Assembly (NCBI GenBank): GCA_050084985.1
Contig: JBITNC010000001.1
Location: 169,632,001 to 169,696,000, forward strand
DNA: 64,000 nucleotides
Direction of reading: 5' to 3'
From: Nageia nagi
Lineage: Eukaryota; Plantae; Pinophyta
A program made the translations under genes and the position numbers. The notes beneath the pieces are model-generated. The model worked only from the letters and a program-made list of their open reading frames with translations, was not told the DNA's origin and searched no databases. Positions 4,442-16,900 of this stretch are shown here, piece by piece; within the stretch, counting starts at the first letter, position 1; each line of letters starts with the position of its first letter.

Positions 4442-4453
4442 GCTCTGATACCA
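4442..4453 (-). promoter_or_regulatory. Primer-binding site, tRNA-iMet
   Basis: GCTCTGATACCA is the reverse complement of TGGTATCAGAGC, 2 nt from the LTR end. Confidence 0.95.
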
Positions 4454-4959: not shown

Positions 4960-5385
4960 CCCATATCCAAACCCTTTTTAACACTTCAGTTAAAGAAGGA
5001 TTTCTTAAGCAATGAATTGTTATCTTAATGATTCCTATTTACAAAATTAGAGATAAAGTAACTCATCAAATTATAGAATTATTATGATAATTCCTTTACT
5101 TTTCAAACTTTATGGTAGTATGATAGAAAATAAAAATAGTATTTAGCTTGATGATAATAATTTAAGAGCTAAAGGAAAAGCTAGTTTCATATGTAGACAT
5201 TCAACAATGGATCACATATTCACATTTCAAGTTATTGTTGAAACCTATCAAAATGATATAAAAGGTTTAATTGCTTGCTTTATGGATTTTAAAAAGCATT
5301 TTATTTGTTCTTAGGGATAAAATTTCAAAGTATATTACTAATTTAGATTTACCTCTTGAAATAAGATTGGTTGTTTATAAACTTT
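4960..5385 (+). mobile_element. Non-LTR (LINE) reverse-transcriptase fragment, abutting the copia LTR
   Basis: Translates as ..LMIPIYKIRDK..SNYRIIMIIPLLFKLYGSMIE..RAKGKASFICRHSTMDHIFTFQVIVE..ACFMDFKK. This matches LINE RT motifs (PIFK, NYR.I, QAGFR..STxDHIF, FVDFxKAFD). Confidence 0.85.
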
Positions 5386-6364
5386 TGGTTATTTGGGTTC
5401 AATTTTTGCTTCCCTAATTGAGTCATAAAGTAAACTGTAAAGAAGGTCCATGGCCATCATTTAGAGTATTTGGCCCCTCCTCCAAAAAAATTATTTTGTT
5501 ATTGATACACATTCTTACTTATTTGTTATCATTTTCCATTCATTTCCAAATTGTTACTTGTATTTGATTATATTTCAAATGATTAACATTATCATTTTTA
5601 TTTATGGAATAATTAATCAACTATATTAATGCATTTAATTATTATTTTTATTATACATAAAAAATTATAATTATATGTAAGTGATATGTCTAATGAGGTG
5701 TACTAATGTTGTATATAAACTTGTATTTTTATTTAAATTATATTTTAAGCAATCAATTATTATTTGTGTTCTACATATGAGTAAATATTTATTCATGCTA
5801 TCTATTTGTTAATACATATTGCCACTTATTTCTTATCATTTCTAATTTATATTTTATGTAATTGTTTCCATCCATTTCCAAATTATTACCTAATAGTTTA
5901 TGATATTTCAAGTGATTCACATTATCATGTATTTATAGATTCAAATCTATTAGTCAAAAATATTAGTGTATTTGATTATTATTTGTACTATGCATAAAAG
6001 CATACAATTACATTTAAGTGATTTATCCAATGAGTTGCACTAATGTTATATTCCTTATATAACTCATATAAACTTGTACTTTTATTTAATATTATGTCTC
6101 AATTTTTGGTTAAGTTTGTCATATGTTGACCATGTTGTGCCTTGTTTCCCATGTTGAATTCCCACTATGACATATACATGCTATGTAATGGCCTACTACA
6201 CTCATCCCATAGATTGGTTGGTGTCCTATGGAAATTTATATACTTTTACCTTTACCTTTAAATTACATTCTTGTATTTAAAAAATCAATTATTCAATCAT
6301 TTAAATGCAAACAAACACTTTTTAATGTGATCTATTCCATATTTTTAAAATACAAACACTTTAT

Positions 6365-7847
6365 TGTAATGAGATGAACTAGGGCTCATGCAAAAATGCA
6401 CATTCCTTGCTCACAAAATTAGTACAAACTCCAAAATAATGCATAAAATAGTTCCAAACACAAAGCAATGATGAAATATTACAACCAACACCCCAGGAGT
6501 GTGATGTCTTTCTCCAAAGCCAAATCTCATGCCAAACACAAAAATATTTAACATCCAAGTATAGAAGCAATAATATCATATTATCCAAAAATCCAACATC
6601 TAGAATAATGATACCAATTGCTTACAATAATGCTAAATTATGCTAGACATCCCACTTCTAATTATGGAAAGCTAGAACATGAATAAATAACATAATATGC
6701 ACTTCTAGTTCCAACATTCAAGCAAGATGAGACAAATGACAATAATATAGCAAAACCAATGCCAGAGTAATTGTATTCAAAGAATAGAATTATAGTAATC
6801 TTAATTATAATAAAAATTTAATGAATATTGATACTCCAAATCACAAACCTACAATGTGGTAAGGCTTGCTCCAGGGCTTCCTCCTCCAGTAGTTGTAGTG
6901 GAATCTCAGAGATCCACTAGCAATATTCTAATAATTCAAGGGGAATTCCAACACCCCCTAGATAGCTAATTGTAATCCTTGAGGTTTGACAAACATCAAG
7001 AAATCATTGCATAAATATAAATTTATGCCAAACTTCAAGCTCTTCACACCATTGATACAAATCCAAGAGAGGCATAACCCTAACCAAGAAGAAGAATAAT
7101 AATTCCAATCACATACATGCATTTTTCTTTTAGGGATACTCCCTATATAGGTAGCTCCATCTCCTATGCATGCAAAGGATTGATGTAATCTCATCCAATA
7201 GTATATTAGGATTGATTTGTATGCTCACTTATCCCATGTGCAAGATTGAGGTACCTTGAGATGGAAGTAATCACATCCCAAGGGTCAAGAGCACCAACAT
7301 TGGGATTTGGGAGTCCTCTAATGCTTTGTACCAAGTGTTATTCCATAGGAATCATGTTTCTCTACCTCGAGTAATTAAAAGGGGAGCTAAATAATAATTA
7401 TTACCTATTAAATGTGAATTTACATCCATCAAGGCTCCTTATATGCAAAATCCCTAATTTAAGTGACTAATATTGTATTTACATTTAATAATTACCTTAG
7501 TATCATCATTACGTCATGATTGGCATTAGAATACTAGTTTACCCCTAACTAGATATAAATCACACCTAGATTAATAACATAATAATTGCACATCCTTAGT
7601 GGAAAGATGTGACCTTTCCAATGGTTAGCTGGAAAGAGAATTTTGGATTCCAATGCATGTGCATGATATTAGAAAATACCATAACTCCTTCATTTCTTGA
7701 TAAAACCTAATCGTGTAACCTATCAAAATAATTGGTATGAGGTCCCCTTTTCGTTCAAAGTGGTAAAACATCATTTTTTGTCTTATAGAAGATGTAATCT
7801 CCTTAAAACCAAAAATGAGTAGAACTTTACAAATTGGGGACATTACA
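6365..7847 (-). repeat. 3' LTR of the 6365-12615 element
   Basis: Collinear with 11108-12615. Preceded on the minus strand by a PPT and a gypsy-type end (..KDKQFWRGGIVMSP). Confidence 0.93.
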
Positions 7848-8480
7848 ATACCACCCCTCCAAAATTGCTTGTCCTTAAGCAATACTAACATCATTATCGA
7901 ATTGGAACCATCTATAATATCCCAATTTGTTATCAAAGAAGATTCTTCATGCTTTTGTTGTGTAACTCTGATTATAAATTCATATTTCTATGGTAGTGCT
8001 TTAGGTGCTCTTTCTTTCCAAATAGCCATGAGGCTATAGATGGTTATAGGCATAGAGAGTGTCACCAAACTAAGTGTTGAAAAATATGTTACAAGAAATC
8101 CCAAATCTAGATATGTAAATGTAGCAATGAAGTAATTGCTCCAAGTCGATACTAACACTTGCCCCCATGTATCTAAGTTATCATCTAGATACCTCATGAT
8201 GTTGTATGTCCCTACTTCAAGTGAAAACTTATCTATGTATAGATGATTAGGAGTGAAGTAAATATTCCAAAATAATGCTAGTGCTCCTCCATGTATCTTA
8301 ATTCTATCTTCAACATTCTTCACATGCCCAAGTGCCTCTAAGTTTATAAAATATAGGTCTAAAGTAGTGTGTTCATTTGAGAAATGTGTACTCCAAGTTG
8401 AGTGGTAACCCTAAGCGATCATCCATGATTCATTTGCAAACTACTTGTATTCAAGCCTAGCATAACTGTATTTAATATAT

Positions 8481-9959
8481 CTAAGTAATGATCTTTCCCA
8501 AAATATTTAATTGCAATACTCCTTTATCTCCTATATCATAATTCAGTTTAGAGTCTTCACCCTCATCAAACTTTTCCTTAATATGTGTAAGTGTGCTTTC
8601 TTCAAGGAATGTGTTTAGAGATTCAAAGCATAATTTGAGTGATAAATTGTAATCCAACTTTTTTAAAGCATCATTCCCTTTACTCTCTACCTTTTTTTCA
8701 TAAAGCTCATGTTCTAGCTTCATGCTTATGTCCATTAGGTCCTCATCCTTTTGAGCTTTATTTAAAGATCAAGATAAATAAACATTATCTTCTTTTAGAA
8801 AAATGGTCACTTCTTCTAACTAAGAATTTCTCATAACAACTTGAAGTCTCATTTAATACAAAATTTCCTTTTTTGTATAATTTTTCCATTTGATGTCAAG
8901 TCTTCTTTGAAGCTCCATTATTTTCATACTTGATTCTTGAATTTGTGATTGCAAAATTGCATTTTTAGTTAGAGCATCATGATATTGGGCCTTGAGATGA
9001 GCCTTTTCTTGAGCCAATTCCTTCTCTATCTTGGCCAAATCCATGCTTTTCTCTATTTCTTGTAGCAATATGCTCATGTCCCTTGATGCCTTATTTGATA
9101 TCTCATCCAACATCATGACCTTGTTAGAGAGTTTTAATATTTCTTCATTGTATTTTCTTTGGATATCATTCACCTTTTGATCATTATATTGGGTCATTCC
9201 CTCTAGATATTTGACATGCTTTGCTTATTCTGCTTTCATCTTCAATTCATGTTACTTCCTGATTTCTATAGTTATATGTTCAACTATGAGTAGTTGTGTA
9301 TTAATTTGCTCTTCCAATGCTCTTTGCCTTTCTTTAGCTATTGCAATCAATTGATACCCTTTCATTAACTCTTGCTGAAGTCAACATATTTTTATATTAT
9401 GTAGTTTGATGGTTGCATGGTGATTTGAGAGTTCCTTTTATAAATATTCAATTTATTTTTCCTTTCTCTATAGGGTGGTTGTAAATCTTATTTTCATAAA
9501 TTCCTCTTTTTGTTGTGCTTCTTGTTGTAGTATGGTAGCTTCTCTCAATGATTCTTGAGCTATTTCATACTTCCTTTTCCATTCAAAGCTTTTCCCTTTT
9601 ATCCCTTTTAAAAGTTTGCAAACCTTGTCATGCTTTTATTCCAATGCTTTATATTTATGTTACATCCTTGCCAACCTATTTGAATCCCTCCTTGCATCCT
9701 TACTACATTTTTGTTTGAACACTAATTATTTTTCTATCATTTGCAATTTATCCTTAAGTGAAAGATACTTTGTTTGTAGTTTATTTCTAATAGTCTTCAA
9801 TTTTGTGTCTAGTTTGGATACCCTAGAGAGTGCTACTTGTTCCTTCTTCCTTGCCTCCATGAGGTTTGTCTTAGTGTTGGCTAGCTCGACCTTGATTCAA
9901 TCCATTGTATTCGATTCACTCTTGATCTCTTTGAGATGCGTTTCCCCTTTTGGAAGTGC
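8481..9959 (-). pseudogene. Decayed intronless coiled-coil ORF; core 9141-9473 resembles synaptonemal complex transverse-filament protein ZYP1/ZEP1
   Basis: One frame without frameshift includes ORFs 8853-9197 and 8481-8735. The core reads L*RKEK*IEYL*KELSNHH..LQQELMKGYQLIAIAKERQRALEEQI..EIRK*HELKMKAE*AKHVKYLEGMTQYNDQKVNDIQRKYNEE. Recalled ZYP1 reads [85 protein letters not shown]. Confidence 0.7.
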
Positions 9960-11107
9960 TTGATTCTCTTCTTTCTTTTATGTTGGTGGTGTTTATGTAC
10001 TTTTCCCTCAATTAAATGAGTTTGTTCTTGTTGAATTTGGAGTACAAGTGCAATGGATTATTTTTAGTAGATGCTTCTTTCCCTTTAAGTCCATAAATAT
10101 CCTATAAATATCCTAAAGTCTACCTTCTCCTTATATTTTTCTAAAACATGTCGACCAAATTATCTTATTTTCTTCATCCATAATTTCAAGTTCTTTTTAT
10201 AAAACTAATTATTCCTCCTAAAATTCTAAAATCACTCCATAGTGAAAAAAACTGATCCACAAGTTAGATCTAGATACTTGGTTGCTAAAGGTTGAGCTTA
10301 TGGCCCAACATCTCCCTTTCTTCCTTCTTCACTGCACAAAATATCACTATGATACTAACATCACCCTCCAAGAGAGAGAATGATAAAAATTTGATATTTA
10401 TTTCTTAGTGCAAAGTATGATACTATTGTAATATTTTATCTCTTAACAAAAATACCAAGATCTTAAATGTGATAACTCAAAGATTAAAATTTCTCAAATC
10501 TGGTGCAATTTGGTCCTTCTCAAAACCCAACGATCTCTTTGAGTGGCCTCAAAAATACCAAATGGTCCTCCTTAAGGTCATATGGACATCCTAATAGCCT
10601 TGAAACTCTAAACAAGTTCCCTCCTTTCTCTTCACAACTCATATCTAGAGCTCTATACTTCAAATGAATCCTCAAACTTGATGAAAATGTTGTAAAATTT
10701 TAGAAATAATTACTCACTAAGCTAGATGACTTCTTTAGAGCCTTCCAATTTAGAAAATATGATCAAATTGGATCCTATGAACTATCAAACAATGGGATCT
10801 AATCTCTTATACCTCCAACGTAGGTATCTCAATGTCTATATTAAGCAAATATGATGTCCAAAGTTCAATGTTAGCCCTCTAGTGTTAGAATGAACTAGAT
10901 TCAAACTTGAGAATGCTCTCCTTAACTCTTTGATACCAATGTAATATCTTCAACCTTCCTTATATATTCTAGTAATATGATAATATCTATTTAGCAGCTT
11001 CTCTCTAGCAAGATGGAGAGATTTGCTTTAAATTCTCCTCTTCAACAATTTAATTTTTTTTTAAGATCTAAACCAATAGGATGGTAAGATCTTGGCTCTA
11101 ATGTAAC

Positions 11108-12615
11108 TGTAATGAATCAAAATAGGGCTCATGCAAAAATGCACATTCCTTGCTTACAAAACTACTACAAACTCTAAAATAATGCATAAAACTAGTTCTA
11201 AACACAAAGCAATAATCAAATATTGCAACCAATACCCCAAGAGTGTGATGCCTTGCTCCAAAGCCAGATCTAATTGCAAACACAAAAATATCCAACATCC
11301 AAGTATAGAAGCAATAATATCATATTAAATAATGAATAACCATCCAAAAATCTAACATCTAGAATAATGATGCCAATTACTTACAATAATGCCAAATTAT
11401 GTTAGAGATCCCACTTCTAGGTATGGAGAGACAAAACATGAATAAATAACACAATATGCACTTCCAATTCCAATGTTCAAGAAAGATGAGCCAAATGATA
11501 ATAATATAGCAAAATAAAGGCCAAAGTAATTATATTCAAATAATAGTATTATAATAACCTTAATTATAATGACAATATAGAGAAGACTAATACTCTAAAG
11601 CACAGAATCGCAGTGTCGCAAGGCTTTCTCCAGGGATTCCTCCACTAGTAGCTATGGTGGAATATCAAATATCTTCTTGCAATATTCTAATAATCCAAGG
11701 GTAATGCTAACACTCACTAGATATCCTTCTATAATCCTTGAGGTTTTTTAACCCTCAAGAAATCATTGCATAAACCTAAAGTTATGTTGAACTTTAAACT
11801 CTTCATGTTATCGATGTGGATCTAAGAGAGGCACAACCCTAACTAAGAAGAAAAAGAATAATTCCAATCACTTACATGCATTAATTTTCTTCTATAAATA
11901 CTCCTTATATAGGTAACTTCATCTTATAATAATACATTTAGTTTGATGTAATCTCATCCAACGATGTTTGAGGTTGATCCGTGTGCTCACTTATCCTACG
12001 TCCATAATTAAGGTACCTCAAGATGGGAGTAATCACATTCAAGGCACAAGAGCACAAAAGTTGGGTTTTGGAAGTCCTCCAATGCTTCCTAGTAAGTGTT
12101 ATTCCATAGGAATCATGTTGCTTTACTTCAAGGAACTAAAAGGGGAGTTATTAAATGCCAATTTACATCCATCAAGGCTTCTTATATGCAATGTCCCTAA
12201 TTTAGGTGACTAATATTACATTTCAATTTAATTATTGCCTTAATATCATCATTACATCATTATTGGCATTAGAATACTAATTTACCCCTAACTAGATATA
12301 AATCACACCTAGATTAATAACATAATAATTGCACATCCTTAGAGGAAGGATGTGACTTTTCTAGTGATCAACTAGAAAGAGAATTCTAGATTCCCATGCA
12401 TGCATGCAATATTAAAAAATTGGTTGGAAAAATGAACTTCAAAATGCCATAACTCCTCTATTTCTTAACTAAACCTAGTCATGTAATCTATCAAAATGAT
12501 TGGCAAGAGGCCCCTTTTCTGTTCCAAGTGGTAAAATGTCAATTCCTAGTTTGTAGAAGACATAATCTCCTTAAAACCAAAAATGAGTAAAAATTTACAA
12601 ATTTGGGACATTACA
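11108..12615 (-). repeat. 5' LTR of the 6365-12615 element
   Basis: TGTAATGAATCAAAATAGGGCTCATGC..GGGACATTACA, homologous to 6365-7847. Confidence 0.93.
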
Positions 12616-13048
12616 TTTATTAAATTATTTGATTATTATTTTTACTATAAATAAAAATAATTCATATAATGATTATTATATGTACTATACATAAAAGCAT
12701 GAAATTATATTTAAGTGATTTATCTAATGAGGTGCACTAATGTTGTATTCTTTAAATAATTTATATAAACTTGTATTTTTATTTAAATTACATTATTGTA
12801 TTTAATCAATCAATTATTTAATCATTTAAATACGAATAAATACTTTTTTTATGTGATTTATTCCATATTTTTTAAATACAAACACTTTATTAAAGTATTC
12901 GATTATTATTTTTACTATACATAAAAATAATTCATATAAACTATCCATGCATTTCAAAATTATCACCCTTTGATTCACATTATCATTTATTTATAGATTC
13001 AAATACATTATTATTTTTAATATATATAAAAACAATGCAATTATATTT

Positions 13049-13278
13049 GCAAAAAGCTATTCTACCTCTAAATTGGCGCATATATGCCCCAAGTATATGG
13101 TTTAAAATGGTGGAACCAAAAATTCATGTTGCTCACATACTGGGGGATAATTGGGCTGAGGAAGTCAAATTTGTAGGTGGCTTGTCCTAATTCATCTAGA
13201 AGGATACAATTTTGATTATTTTTTAGCTATATGCTCAAGGCATATATGTTCAAATTTGGAGGGAGGATAACTTCATCC
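13049..13278. mobile_element. MITE-like element with ~55-bp degenerate terminal inverted repeats
   Basis: Left end GCTATTCTACCTCTAAATTGGCGCATATATGCCCCAAGTATATGG matches the reverse complement of the right end, GTTATCCTCCCTCCAAATTTGAACATATATGCCTTGAGCATATAG. It interrupts the host motif TTATATTT|AGTGATTT. Confidence 0.7.
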
Positions 13279-13829
13279 TAGTGATTTGTTCAATGAGTTG
13301 GAATCATGTAATTTTTTTAGTTTTAAATTGCATTCCTCTATTTAATCGATCAAACAAACATTCTATTTATGTGATCTATTATATTTTTAAAATAATAATT
13401 ATTAAATATTATGTGGCACAATAATCAATTTTATTATTTTTGTTATCATAAGTAGCAACTTTATACTCATGAAGACTTCAAATTATTATTACAATTTTGT
13501 GTGCTTTTTTTATGACTATCCATTCTTTTACAATTTTATTCAAATATTTTTTGTATTTTTGTATTCAAATATTGTACAACTCATCATCTATATTTATACA
13601 TAGTATTTTTAATTAAATATTTTTGTGAATGCTTTAATATTCATGCACATTAAGACTTCTTGCATCAAACTTTATCTTCAACAAGTTGTAATTCTAAAAT
13701 AGAATACTTAGCAAGTTCTCATAATAAATAAATAAAAATTAATATCAATGAAAACAATCTATAACATTAAATAAAGAGATTTTAGTTAAAAACTTTAAAA
13801 TGAAATAAAGATAACTTTAAACAAGGTTC

Positions 13830-13940
13830 CACCATATGATATGAAATGATCCAAGTGCACCATATGATATGAAATAATTTAAATGAATAAATATATGATA
13901 TGAAATAATCTAAATGCATAATCCACTATATGATATGAAG
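13830..13940. repeat. ~30-bp minisatellite with an ATATGATATGAAAT core
   Basis: Four copies of (C)ATATGATATGAA. Confidence 0.75.
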
Positions 13941-13969
13941 CTATGTAATTGTAATATATGAATTTTATT

Positions 13970-16900
13970 CAATATGCAATTGTCAGATGTTAAACCTTAA
14001 TAGAAATGTATTTTGTAAAATGTAAAATAACACTTGTCGTATCTATACCTCTACTCACTTCTCCTCTTCTCTACCCAAAAACTCAAAAATAATTATAAGG
14101 TGTTAAGCCTTGATAGATATGTATTTTGGAAAATTCAAAAGAATATAAGGCATGATAATTGTTTAACAAATTCAAAAACTTAAAAAGCTTGAAACTTTCC
14201 AAGTGCCTACCTAATAATGTTCCAAGTGCCTACCTATATTTTATTTATGTTTCACATGAGATATATTTATATGGAATGCAATGATTTGATGATATACAAT
14301 TCATAACTAGAACAAATTTTCCCTAGTTAAACTCTTTGATTAAGCACTTGGTAACAAACCCTTACAACATAACTTCAGTTATAAATACTTTAATAGCATG
14401 AGTGACTCTAATTGCATTACTCATAGGATAAATAATTATACATGGATTGTTGACCTTATTTGGCATGCAAAAATAGTTTTGTGGACTTTAAATGATGCAA
14501 AAATTATTGTACAAGATGCATGATGCAAACATAGTTTCATTGGGTACAAATTATTGGAGGATATGTAATTCATAGATATAAAAAGAATACAAAATATGGA
14601 AAAATACAAAAGGCCCAAAATTTATTTAACAAGATGTATGATGCAAACATAATTTTATGGACTCTAATGATTAGAAGATATGCAATTCATGGCTATAAGA
14701 AGGATGTAAAATGTGTAAGAATATACAAGTCTTAGGAATCATTTGAAAAGATGCATGATGCAAATATAGTTTCATAGGCTATAATGATTGCAAGATACAT
14801 AAAAAATAGGCTTTCCAAAAAAGGTGCTATATACTTTTATCTAGATGCAATTGTCAGGTGTTAAGCCTTGATAGACATGCATTTTATAAAATGTAGAAGA
14901 ATACAAGGTATAATAATCATTTGATAAGATATATACCTACTACACCAACACCTCACCTCTCCTCTCTTCTCCTTTACTCTCTCGTTTCTACTCTTCCAAG
15001 AAAAATGATAAAAATTGTAGGTGCTCGCTTGATGACTTTCCAAGTTCCAACCTAAGTTCTTAAGCACTCACTCAGAATTCTTAAAACAAAATCAATGTGT
15101 CTTGGTTTTACATTGAATGTTATGGTTATGATTTCCTTATATACATGTATGTAAAATGTGGAATAATACAAAAGACATGGGAATTGTTTTACAAGTTGCA
15201 TGATACAAACACAGTTTCATGGATTAAAAAGATTAAAATGTATAGAAAAATGGGTTTTCTAAAAAAGGCTCTAGATACTTTTATCTAAATGCAATTATAA
15301 ACAAATTAGGTTTTTTTATGCTAATGAAGTTTAAGAGGTGAAGGTGAAGAAATATACCTTAGGAGTTTGCCTTGGGTTTATGCAACTAGATTATGATGAT
15401 ATTCTCCCAAGTGATATACTTTTTGTGCCAAAGTAACAAGGAGGTGATAAATAATGGTATGATCAAAAGTATTGAAATTTGATCATAAGTATCAACTTTT
15501 AATCATACCTTGTCAACTACCCAACTCATTCATGTAACTTTGTAGTTGGTATTTGTGAACTTTTTTTCTTGGTGCCTATAGAATTCATAACAACTTGGAG
15601 TTAGAAAAATTTTTAGTAGAACCCTAAAGTTATATTTTATAATTGAATGTAATTTTATACTAGAATTTGTAGTAGAACCTAGAGAAATCACATGAATTTT
15701 TCGATAAGATACATGATACATTTCTAAGGGCCATAATGATCACAAGATATACATAAAATAGATTTTCTAAAAAGGTCCTAGAGACTTTTAAGTAGGTGCA
15801 ATTATCATGTACAAAATAAACTTTGTAACCTTTTCTAGAAATCTTCCAACATGTACAACCATGGGAGCTCTAGAAGAAGGTGTAGACATCTATAAAAGAG
15901 TAGTTGAAAATGGTTTTGCATTGAATGTTGTGGTTGTGAGTGCCTTATAGACATGTGCACAAAATGTAGAAGAATACATAACTCTTGATAATTATTTTAT
16001 AAGATACATAATGTAAATATAATTTAATAAACTATAATAATTGGAGGGTATGTAATTCATGTCTATAAAAAGGATACCCTCAAAATATTTGATCTGATGA
16101 AGCACTTAGGAACCAACCTAAAAATCATAACCTTTTTATATAATTTACTTACATGAAGTCATCTACTTCTAGTGGATGATGATTGTAAATACTTTAATAG
16201 CATGAGTGACTCTTAGTCATATAGGCTATCTCAAGGGATATTTGAACTTCATTACTAAAACACACATAAAAACTAAATTGGGTGTGTGGATGTGTCTAGC
16301 TACTTGGTTCTTACAAATTGAATGTTATGGTTTTGAATGCCTTGATAAACATTTATGTATAATGCATAAGAATACATAAGACCCAAAAATTATTTGGCAA
16401 GCTAAGATCTGTGATGCAAATACAATTTCATAGACTATAATGAATCTTGGAGAATATGTAATTCATAGCTACAACAAATATGCCCTTAAACTCTTTGATC
16501 TAATGAATTACTTAGGAAGAAACCATAATAGCATAAAATTTTGTATGTATTTTACTTGCATCCAGTCATCAAGTCTACTAGATGAGGTTTGTAAAAAACT
16601 TTCATAACATGAGTGGCTCTTAGTTGTGGAGGTTATATCAAGGGATCCTTTAACTTCACTACCAAAATACCAATAAAAATTGAATTGGGTATGTAGATAT
16701 GACTAGATAATTGGTGCTTGTAAATTAAATGTTATGGTCTTGAATGTTTTGATAGATATGCATGTAAAATATGGAAGAATACAGAAGTCTTATGAGTTGT
16801 TTAACAAGATGCATGATGCAAATATAGTTTTATGGACTTCAATGATTAAAGGATATTTAATTCATGGCTATAGCAAGGATGTCTTTAAAATATTTAATTT

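What the first reader, a model, noticed from the sequence alone, without database searches (positions are those of the whole stretch)
6365..12615. LTR retroelement whose only recognisable cargo is a synaptonemal-complex (ZYP1-like) coiled-coil gene
Seen: a complete element with two LTRs, PPT, PBS and a perfect TTTAT TSD, but no gag/pol. It carries a sense-strand frame (9959-8481, ~490 codons) with no frameshift or intron. All 10 stops between 9959 and 9197 could be C-to-T changes from CAA/CAG/CGA codons, as expected from methylation decay after insertion. The core 9473-9141 aligns almost gap-free with the ZYP1/ZEP1 C-terminal coiled coil (..IE.LQKE..H..LQ..EEQI..KQ..L..Q.NDQ.VNDI.RKY), judged from memory. 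Known: ZYP1 is the multi-intron meiotic transverse filament that controls crossover interference. Inference: a spliced ZYP1 mRNA segment was captured, fused to other coiled-coil sequence and carried as an open ORF by a mobile family. It could have acted as a meiosis-targeting or dominant-negative SC factor, or as a source of anti-ZYP1 siRNA. I know of no description of such a family.
Basis: partly seen in the sequence, partly recalled or inferred. Interest (0 to 1): 0.85.

Follow-up and report, generated by a model that had tools for sequence, protein, structure and literature searches.

The report
Dead LTR retroelement carrying captured ZYP1 pieces
An old, decayed, non-autonomous LTR retrotransposon really does carry two in-frame pieces of the host's synaptonemal-complex gene ZYP1/ZEP1, which is a clear new example of the known process of gene capture by plant retrotransposons rather than a new kind of system.

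Summary
The region 6365-12615 is one inserted unit. It has two ~1.5-kb LTRs (K2P 0.19), a TTTAT target duplication, an empty paralogous site next door, a polypurine tract, and no gag or pol.

The ZYP1 homology is real and specific. Among 1.84 billion representative proteins, the only genuine hits of the 114-aa ORF are conifer and Ginkgo ZYP1/ZEP1 (E 8e-12 and 3e-7). PDB coiled-coil proteins reach only E 0.04.

Profile mapping shows two ZYP1 blocks in one frame but in permuted order. Block A (9470-9138) matches ZYP1 positions 466-577. Block B (9146-8682) matches positions 293-452.

The flanks of the frame are stop-poor but not recognisably ZYP1. The upstream flank has heptad periodicity.

The cargo nests among conifer ZYP1 genes, next to Taxus, on a very long branch. 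It ignores ZYP1's site-specific conservation. It is more diverged than the LTRs, so capture predates this insertion.

This copy is dead, with 13 internal stops. Gene capture by plant LTR elements is well described (Bs1; hundreds of cases in rice and sorghum). A meiotic function is untested speculation. The scan has unchecked notes of other captures in this genome, but none of ZYP1.

The parts
6360..6364 (.). Target-site duplication TTTAT, on the 3' side of the element
   Evidence: The same pentamer is at 12616-12620, and the empty paralogous site at 12866-12905 has it once.
6365..7847 (-). 3' LTR (1483 nt), with termini TGTAATG...CATTACA
   Evidence: It pairs with 11108-12615 at K2P 0.19.
7848..7864 (-). 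Polypurine tract (..GGAGGGGTGGTAT) abutting the 3' LTR
   Evidence: sequence read directly. It is also conserved in the second family copy P0123.
7805..8197 (-). 3' interior, polypurine tract and LTR start, shared with another copy of the family
   Evidence: P0123, from a Logan contig of 2230 nt, aligns at 74% amino-acid identity over 131 residues.
8484..8681 (-). Downstream flank of the frame: 66 codons with no internal stop, followed by the terminal TAG at 8483-8481. Origin undetermined.
   Evidence: It is not ZYP1-detectable, but about 5.7 stops would be expected by composition.
8682..9146 (-). Cargo block B, matching ZYP1/ZEP1 central coiled coil at profile positions 293-452. It has 3 stops and only in-frame gaps.
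   Evidence: 85 bits against the gymnosperm profile; 0 of 300 shuffles reach it. Searches give 46% (hmmalign columns) to 49% (tree columns) identity to Taxus and Cryptomeria.
9138..9470 (-). Cargo block A, matching ZYP1/ZEP1 profile positions 466-577, including the family's most conserved motif (..NDQ..NDI.RKY). It has 6 stops. It joins block B in frame at ..RKYNEE/ILKLS..
   Evidence: 64 bits; 0 of 300 shuffles reach it..
9471..9977 (-). Upstream flank of the frame: 169 codons with 4 stops and strong 3.5-residue hydrophobic periodicity. It is a coiled-coil coding remnant of undetermined origin.
   Evidence: 0 of 2000 shuffles reach the periodicity. Searches find no ZYP1 signal. Searches find no family.
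9978..11107 (-). Leader of 1.13 kb with no coding signal
11094..11106 (-). Degraded PBS-like site, 9 of 13 to the initiator-Met PBS, with three of the four mismatches being transitions
   Evidence: read directly. This is weak. One search shows that the only match with 2 or fewer mismatches in the element is at 10927-10938, at chance level.
11108..12615 (-). 5' LTR (1508 nt)
12616..12620 (.). Target-site duplication TTTAT, on the 5' side of the element
12866..12905 (.). Paralogous empty site in the next unit of the flanking tandem repeat
   Evidence: (families D4 and D12).

Best explanation
This is an old, dead, non-autonomous (LARD-like) LTR retrotransposon on the minus strand. Its interior holds a chimeric reading frame of about 490 codons built by retroelement-mediated gene capture.

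Shown:
- Two pieces of a conifer ZYP1/ZEP1 coding sequence lie head to tail in one frame, uninterrupted, in permuted order (ZYP1 466-577, then 293-452).
- They are flanked in the same frame by other coding-like sequence. The upstream flank is heptad-periodic.
- The cargo branches inside conifer ZYP1, next to Taxus.
- It is much more diverged than the LTRs are from each other.
- It lost conserved and variable ZYP1 positions alike.

Inferred:
- During reverse transcription in a virus-like particle, the enzyme switched from element RNA to a co-packaged spliced ZYP1 mRNA, and switched again within it. This produced the permuted in-frame fusion.
- The chimeric element was then copied by a helper element's proteins for a long time before this copy inserted.
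- While the family was active the frame was probably kept open. The evidence is that stops are about half the neutral expectation, indels are in-frame only, and no frameshift is seen.
- After insertion the copy decayed neutrally, largely by C-to-T changes.
- At this locus it does nothing today.
For: Structure and single insertion.

No gag or pol: and the interior is only 3260 bp.

Coding frame.

ZYP1 homology:
- phmmer against 1.84e9 proteins gives only Cryptomeria ZEP1 (E 7.9e-12) and the Ginkgo orthologue (2.8e-07).
- tblastn gives 1e-19 and 3e-11 with composition correction.
- Profile scores are 56/41 bits (18-species profile) and 64/85 bits (gymnosperm profile) for A/B. None of 300 shuffles reaches them.

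Permuted order and shared frame.

Phylogeny: the cargo sits inside Cupressales with 97/95 support, sister to Taxus with 93/85, on an end branch of 1.01 against 0.07-0.16 for host genes. Each block alone gives the same nearest neighbours.

No ZYP1-type constraint: identity to Taxus is 44% in the conserved block A and 49% in the variable block B. Taxus against Ginkgo is 71% and 53% on the same columns.

Capture older than insertion: 47% amino-acid identity needs about 0.4 substitutions per site, against about 0.1 per LTR.

Frame kept open:
- There are 13 internal stops in 493 codons. My scaling gives about 25 expected at d = 0.4.
- The LTR pair shows 5 of 8 indels that would shift a frame. The cargo shows only in-frame gaps of 5, 8 and 3 residues.

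Family has another copy.

Mechanism and precedent: PMC13317346 (abnormal template switching; Bs1) and PMC3726574.
Against: - Only one copy could be examined.
- 'Spliced mRNA' and 'template switching' are inferred, not seen. No exon map of the host gene was available.
- Within the ZYP1 blocks alone the stop count does not reject pure neutral decay. It is 9 observed against about 13 expected, P about 0.17.
- The case for past selection rests on the flanks and on indel counts borrowed from the LTRs.
- No other predicted protein in 15 billion resembles the cargo. There is therefore no sign of a large family with intact cargo frames.
- The PBS is poorly preserved.
Confidence: 0.78

Rival explanations
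1. Nested or DNA-level origin. A LINE-made processed pseudogene of ZYP1, or filler DNA copied during break repair, landed inside a pre-existing non-autonomous LTR element. The LTR element did not itself capture the mRNA.
For: The cargo is intronless. The interior has no other recognisable element genes. Only one copy was seen with the cargo.
Against: - No poly(A) tract or internal target duplication is visible at the ends of the coding stretch.
- The two blocks are permuted yet joined in frame, and they continue in frame into further coding sequence.
- The cargo lies in sense orientation.
- The cargo is 3-4 times more diverged than one LTR. It was therefore already old when this copy inserted, which means it travelled with the element.
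Confidence: 0.1
2. The family encoded, or still encodes, a truncated transverse-filament protein that enters or poisons the synaptonemal complex. Alternatively it feeds siRNAs against ZYP1, so that the element acts on meiosis.
For: - The captured parts are the central coiled coil, through which transverse filaments pair. This is my background knowledge and was not tested.
- The frame seems to have been kept open for a time.
- Bs1 shows that a chimeric captured frame can be expressed in reproductive tissue (PMC13317346).
- Captured fragments can yield cross-acting siRNAs (bioRxiv 10.1101/777037).
Against: - This copy has 13 internal stops.
- Invariant ZYP1 residues are lost as freely as variable ones.
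- The N-terminal and C-terminal regions that hold most invariant columns are absent.
- At 44-49% protein identity no long identical RNA stretches with the host gene are expected today.
- No expression or small-RNA data could be obtained.
Confidence: 0.06
3. The ZYP1 likeness is a chance or compositional match between K/E/L/Q-rich coiled coils.
For: The sequence is low in complexity. Pfam gives only weak coiled-coil hits such as TPR_MLP1_2 at E 0.005.
Against: - Only ZYP1 orthologues are found among 1.84e9 proteins.
- The best PDB coiled coil reaches E 0.037 in a library 10,000 times smaller.
- 0 of 300 composition-preserving shuffles reach the profile scores.
- Identity falls with host phylogeny: 46-49% conifers, 40-42% Ginkgo, 22-28% angiosperms.
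- The cargo nests in the tree with 97/95 support.
Confidence: 0.01

Closest known systems
Bs1 of maize, an LTR retroelement with transduced host gene fragments forming a chimeric ORF (Jin and Bennetzen 1994; Elrouby and Bureau 2001, 2010, as summarised in PMC13317346)
   Same: Both are non-autonomous LTR elements without their own pol. Both carry intronless pieces of cellular genes in sense orientation, fused into one hybrid reading frame and propagated with the element.
   Different: The source gene differs: ZYP1/ZEP1 here, against H+-ATPase, xylan endohydrolase and glucanase in Bs1. Two pieces of the same gene are joined in permuted order. The host is a conifer-type genome. The copy seen is dead and no expression data exist.
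Genome-wide LTR-retrotransposon gene captures in rice and sorghum (PMC3726574), and capture by abnormal template switching (PMC13317346)
   Same: It is the same class of event, a host coding sequence found between two LTRs. Many such captures decay as pseudogenes.
   Different: I found no report of a synaptonemal-complex gene among captures, nor of such captures in gymnosperms. Two searches found no paper linking ZYP1 to retrotransposon capture. The library is incomplete.
ZYP1/ZEP1 transverse-filament genes of plants
   Same: Blocks A and B are homologous to the central coiled coil. They include the conserved ..LKEISQRNDQ.INDIRRK.. motif.
   Different: The cargo is not a ZYP1 gene. It lacks the N-terminal third and the C-terminal domain, its order is permuted, it has stops, and it shows no ZYP1-like pattern of constraint.
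LARD / TRIM non-autonomous LTR elements
   Same: It has LTRs, a polypurine tract and a target duplication but no gag-pol, so it must depend on a helper element.
   Different: It carries a long, formerly open host-derived frame rather than non-coding filler.

Membership tests
LTR retrotransposon (structural definition) | Two direct long terminal repeats with TG...CA termini | tested here: met
   1483 and 1508 nt, 83% identical, TGTAATG...CATTACA.
LTR retrotransposon (structural definition) | Target-site duplication of 4-6 bp, shown to be an insertion | tested here: met
   TTTAT on both sides, and the empty paralogous site at 12866-12905 has one TTTAT.
LTR retrotransposon (structural definition) | Polypurine tract next to the 3' LTR and a tRNA primer-binding site next to the 5' LTR | tested here: inconclusive
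   The polypurine tract is clear and conserved in P0123. The PBS is only 9 of 13 to the initiator-Met PBS at 11094-11106, and one search finds nothing better next to the LTR.
Autonomous Ty1/copia or Ty3/gypsy element | gag and pol (protease, RT, RNase H, integrase) domains | tested here: not met
   Searches find no Pfam family in any internal ORF. The interior is 3260 bp. ORF pieces are short, so very decayed remnants cannot be ruled out.
LTR-retrotransposon gene capture (Bs1-like transduction) | Host-gene-derived sequence between the LTRs, shown to be homologous to a cellular gene | tested here: met
LTR-retrotransposon gene capture (Bs1-like transduction) | Cargo lacks the introns of the source gene (RNA-mediated origin) | tested here: inconclusive
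   The matches of 111 and 155 codons are uninterrupted. Rice ZEP1 has 21 exons for 869 aa (PMC8523357). The host gene's exon map could not be fetched.
LTR-retrotransposon gene capture (Bs1-like transduction) | Cargo shared by several transposed copies of the family | not testable with these tools
   Only one copy is in the window. P0123 shows a second copy of the 3' end but not its interior.
ZYP1/ZEP1 transverse-filament protein | Conserved N-terminal region (most invariant columns lie at positions 50-145) | tested here: not met
   Searches find no match to profile positions below 292 in any frame.
ZYP1/ZEP1 transverse-filament protein | Colinear central coiled coil with the C-terminal conserved motif | tested here: not met
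   positions 466-577 lie upstream of 293-452. The motif is present but has two stops on invariant Gln and several invariant residues replaced.
ZYP1/ZEP1 transverse-filament protein | C-terminal globular, basic domain | tested here: not met
   Searches find nothing beyond profile position 578.

The most novel reading that the evidence does not exclude
A family of non-autonomous conifer LTR elements kept an open chimeric coiled-coil gene for tens of millions of years. The gene was built from the synaptonemal-complex transverse filament. It served either as a self-assembling Gag surrogate or RNA-protecting frame, or as a protein that binds host ZYP1 in meiocytes, where new insertions are inherited. 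Together with the scan's unchecked notes of PDS5-carrying elements in the same genome, this would point to retroelements that recruit chromosome-axis proteins.
Probability: 0.08. Interest if true: 0.75.

Novelty: new member of a known kind. Interest (0 to 1): 0.4.

Why it matters
It adds a well-documented case of retroelement-mediated capture of a core meiotic gene in a giant conifer-type genome. The permuted in-frame join records at least two template switches.

If other copies prove to have kept the frame open, it would be a rare chance to ask why a parasitic element preserves a host-derived coiled coil.

As it stands, the practical value is for annotation. ZYP1-like hits of this kind in conifer assemblies are transposon cargo, not meiotic gene paralogues.

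Tried and rejected
- Circular-RNA or back-splice origin of the permuted order. The only exon boundary I could infer nearby, from Magnolia isoforms, lies at profile position 588/589 and not at the 577/578 junction. The idea is not supported, but the evidence is weak.
- Flanks as further ZYP1. The upstream and downstream flanks score no better than shuffles. This holds against the 18-species profile, the gymnosperm profile, and a restricted test against the expected colinear ZYP1 segments.
- Upstream flank as a diverged duplicate of block B. The only signal is a marginal local match, E 0.004 in a two-sequence search with composition correction off. I did not rely on it.
- Naming the flanks and the 111-aa ORF. 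Pfam, PDB and Atlas searches gave nothing beyond generic coiled-coil look-alikes.
- Looking for other cargo-bearing copies. There are none in the window, none among predicted proteins, and none in the scan's index by sequence.
- A note on method. The two cargo blocks were placed in one alignment row, in ZYP1 order with gaps at stops, only inside a local script for the tree. Trees of each block apart agree.
Full report
**Anatomy**

A self-comparison of 5000-14000 finds one pair of long direct repeats, at 6365-7847 and 11108-12615. No further copy exists in the 64-kb window. Aligned, the repeats are 1483 and 1508 nt long. They have 245 differences in 1463 aligned columns (166 transitions, 79 transversions), giving K2P 0.19. 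There are eight indel events, five of which are not multiples of three. Both repeats begin TGTAATG and end CATTACA.

The pentamer TTTAT flanks both ends. The element sits in an AT-rich tandem repeat. The next unit of that repeat (12866-12905) carries the uninterrupted target with a single TTTAT, so the 6251 bp entered as one unit.

On the minus strand a polypurine tract (GGAGGGGTGGTAT) abuts the 3' LTR. The site next to the 5' LTR matches the initiator-Met primer-binding sequence at only 9 of 13 positions. The only match with two or fewer mismatches inside the element lies 170 nt further in and is at chance level.

The interior is 3260 bp. None of 19 ORF pieces from both strands hits a Pfam family significantly. 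The element is non-autonomous. The window as a whole has 30% G+C and CpG at 0.12 of expectation. It has no ORF of 180 codons, so it is heavily methylation-decayed DNA.

**The frame**

The minus-strand frame 9959-8481 has 13 internal stops in 493 codons. The other two sense frames have 47 and 50, and 42 are expected from composition.

The argument that they 'could' all be C-to-T products holds for any stop codon and proves nothing. Set against orthologues, four of the nine stops inside the ZYP1 blocks fit a single C-to-T step. Two of these lie on Gln residues invariant in all eight species compared.

**Is it ZYP1?**

Yes. The 114-aa ORF (8856-9197, minus) was scored against 1.84 billion representative proteins of any length. 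Three proteins passed E 0.001. Two are real matches, P0001 (E 7.9e-12, 51% identity) and P0002 (2.8e-07). The third is a repeat protein matched over 28 residues.

P0001 is annotated synaptonemal complex protein ZEP1 of Cryptomeria japonica. P0002 is a Ginkgo protein whose 354 relatives are the plant ZYP1/ZEP1 family.

The same ORF finds nothing better than E 0.037 among PDB chains, which include myosins, SMCs and tropomyosins.

**Two blocks, permuted**

tblastn with composition correction gives two hits. Cryptomeria residues 293-453 match 9146-8706 (E 1e-19). Residues 653-747 match 9413-9138 (E 3e-11).

A profile of 18 ZYP1 proteins, run on the frame with X at stops, resolves two domains:
- Profile positions 466-577 map to 9470-9138 (block A).
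- Profile positions 293-452 map to 9146-8682 (block B).

A gymnosperm-only profile gives 64 and 85 bits, and none of 300 shuffles comes near.

The later part of ZYP1 therefore lies upstream of the earlier part. They are joined in frame at ..RKYNEE/ILKLS...

**The flanks**

The flanks of the frame are 9977-9471 (upstream) and 8681-8484 (downstream). They are stop-poor, with 4 stops in 169 codons and 0 in 66. They score no better than shuffles against ZYP1, even when tested only against the expected colinear segments.

The upstream flank has strong 3.5-residue hydrophobic periodicity that none of 2000 shuffles reaches. It is therefore a real coiled-coil coding remnant of unknown source. Pfam, PDB and Atlas give only generic coiled-coil look-alikes.

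**Where the cargo came from and how it evolved**

Identity falls with host phylogeny:

| Block | Cryptomeria / Taxus | Ginkgo | Angiosperms and a lycophyte |
|---|---|---|---|
| B | 46% | 40% | 22-28% |
| A | 39-44% | 39% | 27-34% |

In a maximum-likelihood tree the cargo nests inside Cryptomeria+Taxus with 97/95 support. It is sister to Taxus with 93/85 support. Its end branch is 1.01 changes per site, against 0.07-0.16 for the host genes. Each block alone gives the same nearest neighbours. The host is thus probably a Cupressales conifer, perhaps near Taxaceae.

The cargo is about as diverged in the conserved block A as in the variable block B. Against Taxus it is 44% identical in A and 49% in B. 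Taxus against Ginkgo is 71% in A and 53% in B. This is the pattern of evolution blind to ZYP1 function.

A neutral simulation from a Taxus-like sequence needs about 0.4 substitutions per site to reach 47% identity. That is roughly four times the 0.1 accumulated per LTR since insertion. The capture is therefore much older than this insertion, and the cargo must have been copied along with the element.

A further sign of a family is P0123, a 128-aa ORF from a 2230-nt public contig. It aligns at 74% identity to 8197-7805, running through the polypurine tract into the LTR.

**Was the frame ever selected?**

The evidence is suggestive only.
- At d = 0.4 the simulation predicts about 13 stops per 254 codons. 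I observe 9 in the ZYP1 blocks (P about 0.17).
- Scaling that rate to the whole frame gives about 25 expected, against 13 observed (the scaling is mine).
- The LTRs show that most indels here would shift a frame, five of eight.
- The cargo differs from ZYP1 by in-frame gaps only (5, 8 and 3 residues, plus single residues). A, B and both flanks share one frame.

I put about 55% on the frame having been kept open while the family was active. Possible reasons are translation-dependent RNA stability or a self-associating Gag-like role. I put very little on any role today.

**Mechanism**

The simplest account is the known one. Reverse transcriptase switched templates between element RNA and a co-packaged spliced mRNA, with a further switch within ZYP1 giving the permuted join (PMC13317346). 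'Spliced' is inferred from the uninterrupted blocks and from the 21 exons for 869 residues in rice ZEP1 (PMC8523357).

A back-splice (circular RNA) origin was considered. The one nearby exon boundary I could infer from isoforms lies at 588/589, not 577/578.

**What is known**

Capture of host gene fragments by plant LTR elements is established.
- Bs1 of maize carries three transduced fragments fused into a chimeric gene.
- 672 captured genes are reported in rice and 1343 in sorghum (PMC13317346, PMC3726574).
- Captured fragments can provoke cross-silencing (bioRxiv 10.1101/777037).

Searches linking ZYP1 to retrotransposon capture found nothing, and the 2026 review of gene capture mentions neither meiosis nor gymnosperms.

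First-stage notes of this scan, unchecked, list other LTR elements with host cargo in the same genome, including PDS5, OTU and others. If they hold, capture is common here and this case is one of many.

**Limits**

Copy number, the host ZYP1 gene, dN/dS among copies and expression could therefore not be examined.

**Verdict**

The functional reading is unsupported. This is a new member of a known kind and of moderate interest.

Noticed in passing
window 5622-6365 and 12616-13044: The element sits in an AT-rich tandem repeat with start-to-start spacings of about 337, 270 and 105 nt. One unit serves as an empty-site control for the insertion.
   Followed up: partly
window 7988-8323 (minus), continuing to 7805: A 111-codon open frame lies in the 3' interior. 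In a second family copy (P0123, Logan contig) it stays open for 128 codons, straight through the polypurine tract into the LTR. It has no Pfam, Atlas or other relatives. It may be chance openness or an unknown element frame.
   Followed up: partly
window 4442-4453 (minus): A perfect initiator-Met primer-binding sequence, TGGTATCAGAGC, lies here. It probably belongs to another LTR element just upstream of the finding.
   Followed up: no
window 10927-10938 (minus): A PBS-like TGGTATCAAAGA lies 170 nt inside the leader. It may be a relic of an earlier element boundary or chance (3.1 such matches are expected per window).
   Followed up: partly
P0001 (Cryptomeria japonica ZEP1), residues about 465-650: The Cryptomeria protein model carries three to four extra tandem copies of a unit of about 54 residues (..KKEEENGKLLK.IAED.L.IKVQETEISQLQQES..) that Taxus, Ginkgo and angiosperm ZYP1 have once. 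This would lengthen the transverse-filament coiled coil.
   Followed up: no
whole window: G+C is 30%, CpG is at 0.12 of expectation, and there is no ORF of 180 codons in 64 kb. This indicates extreme methylation-driven decay of repeats.
   Followed up: partly
window 13828-13961: A short array of units of about 28-35 nt (..CCATATGATATGAAAT..) lies just beyond the flanking repeat.
   Followed up: no
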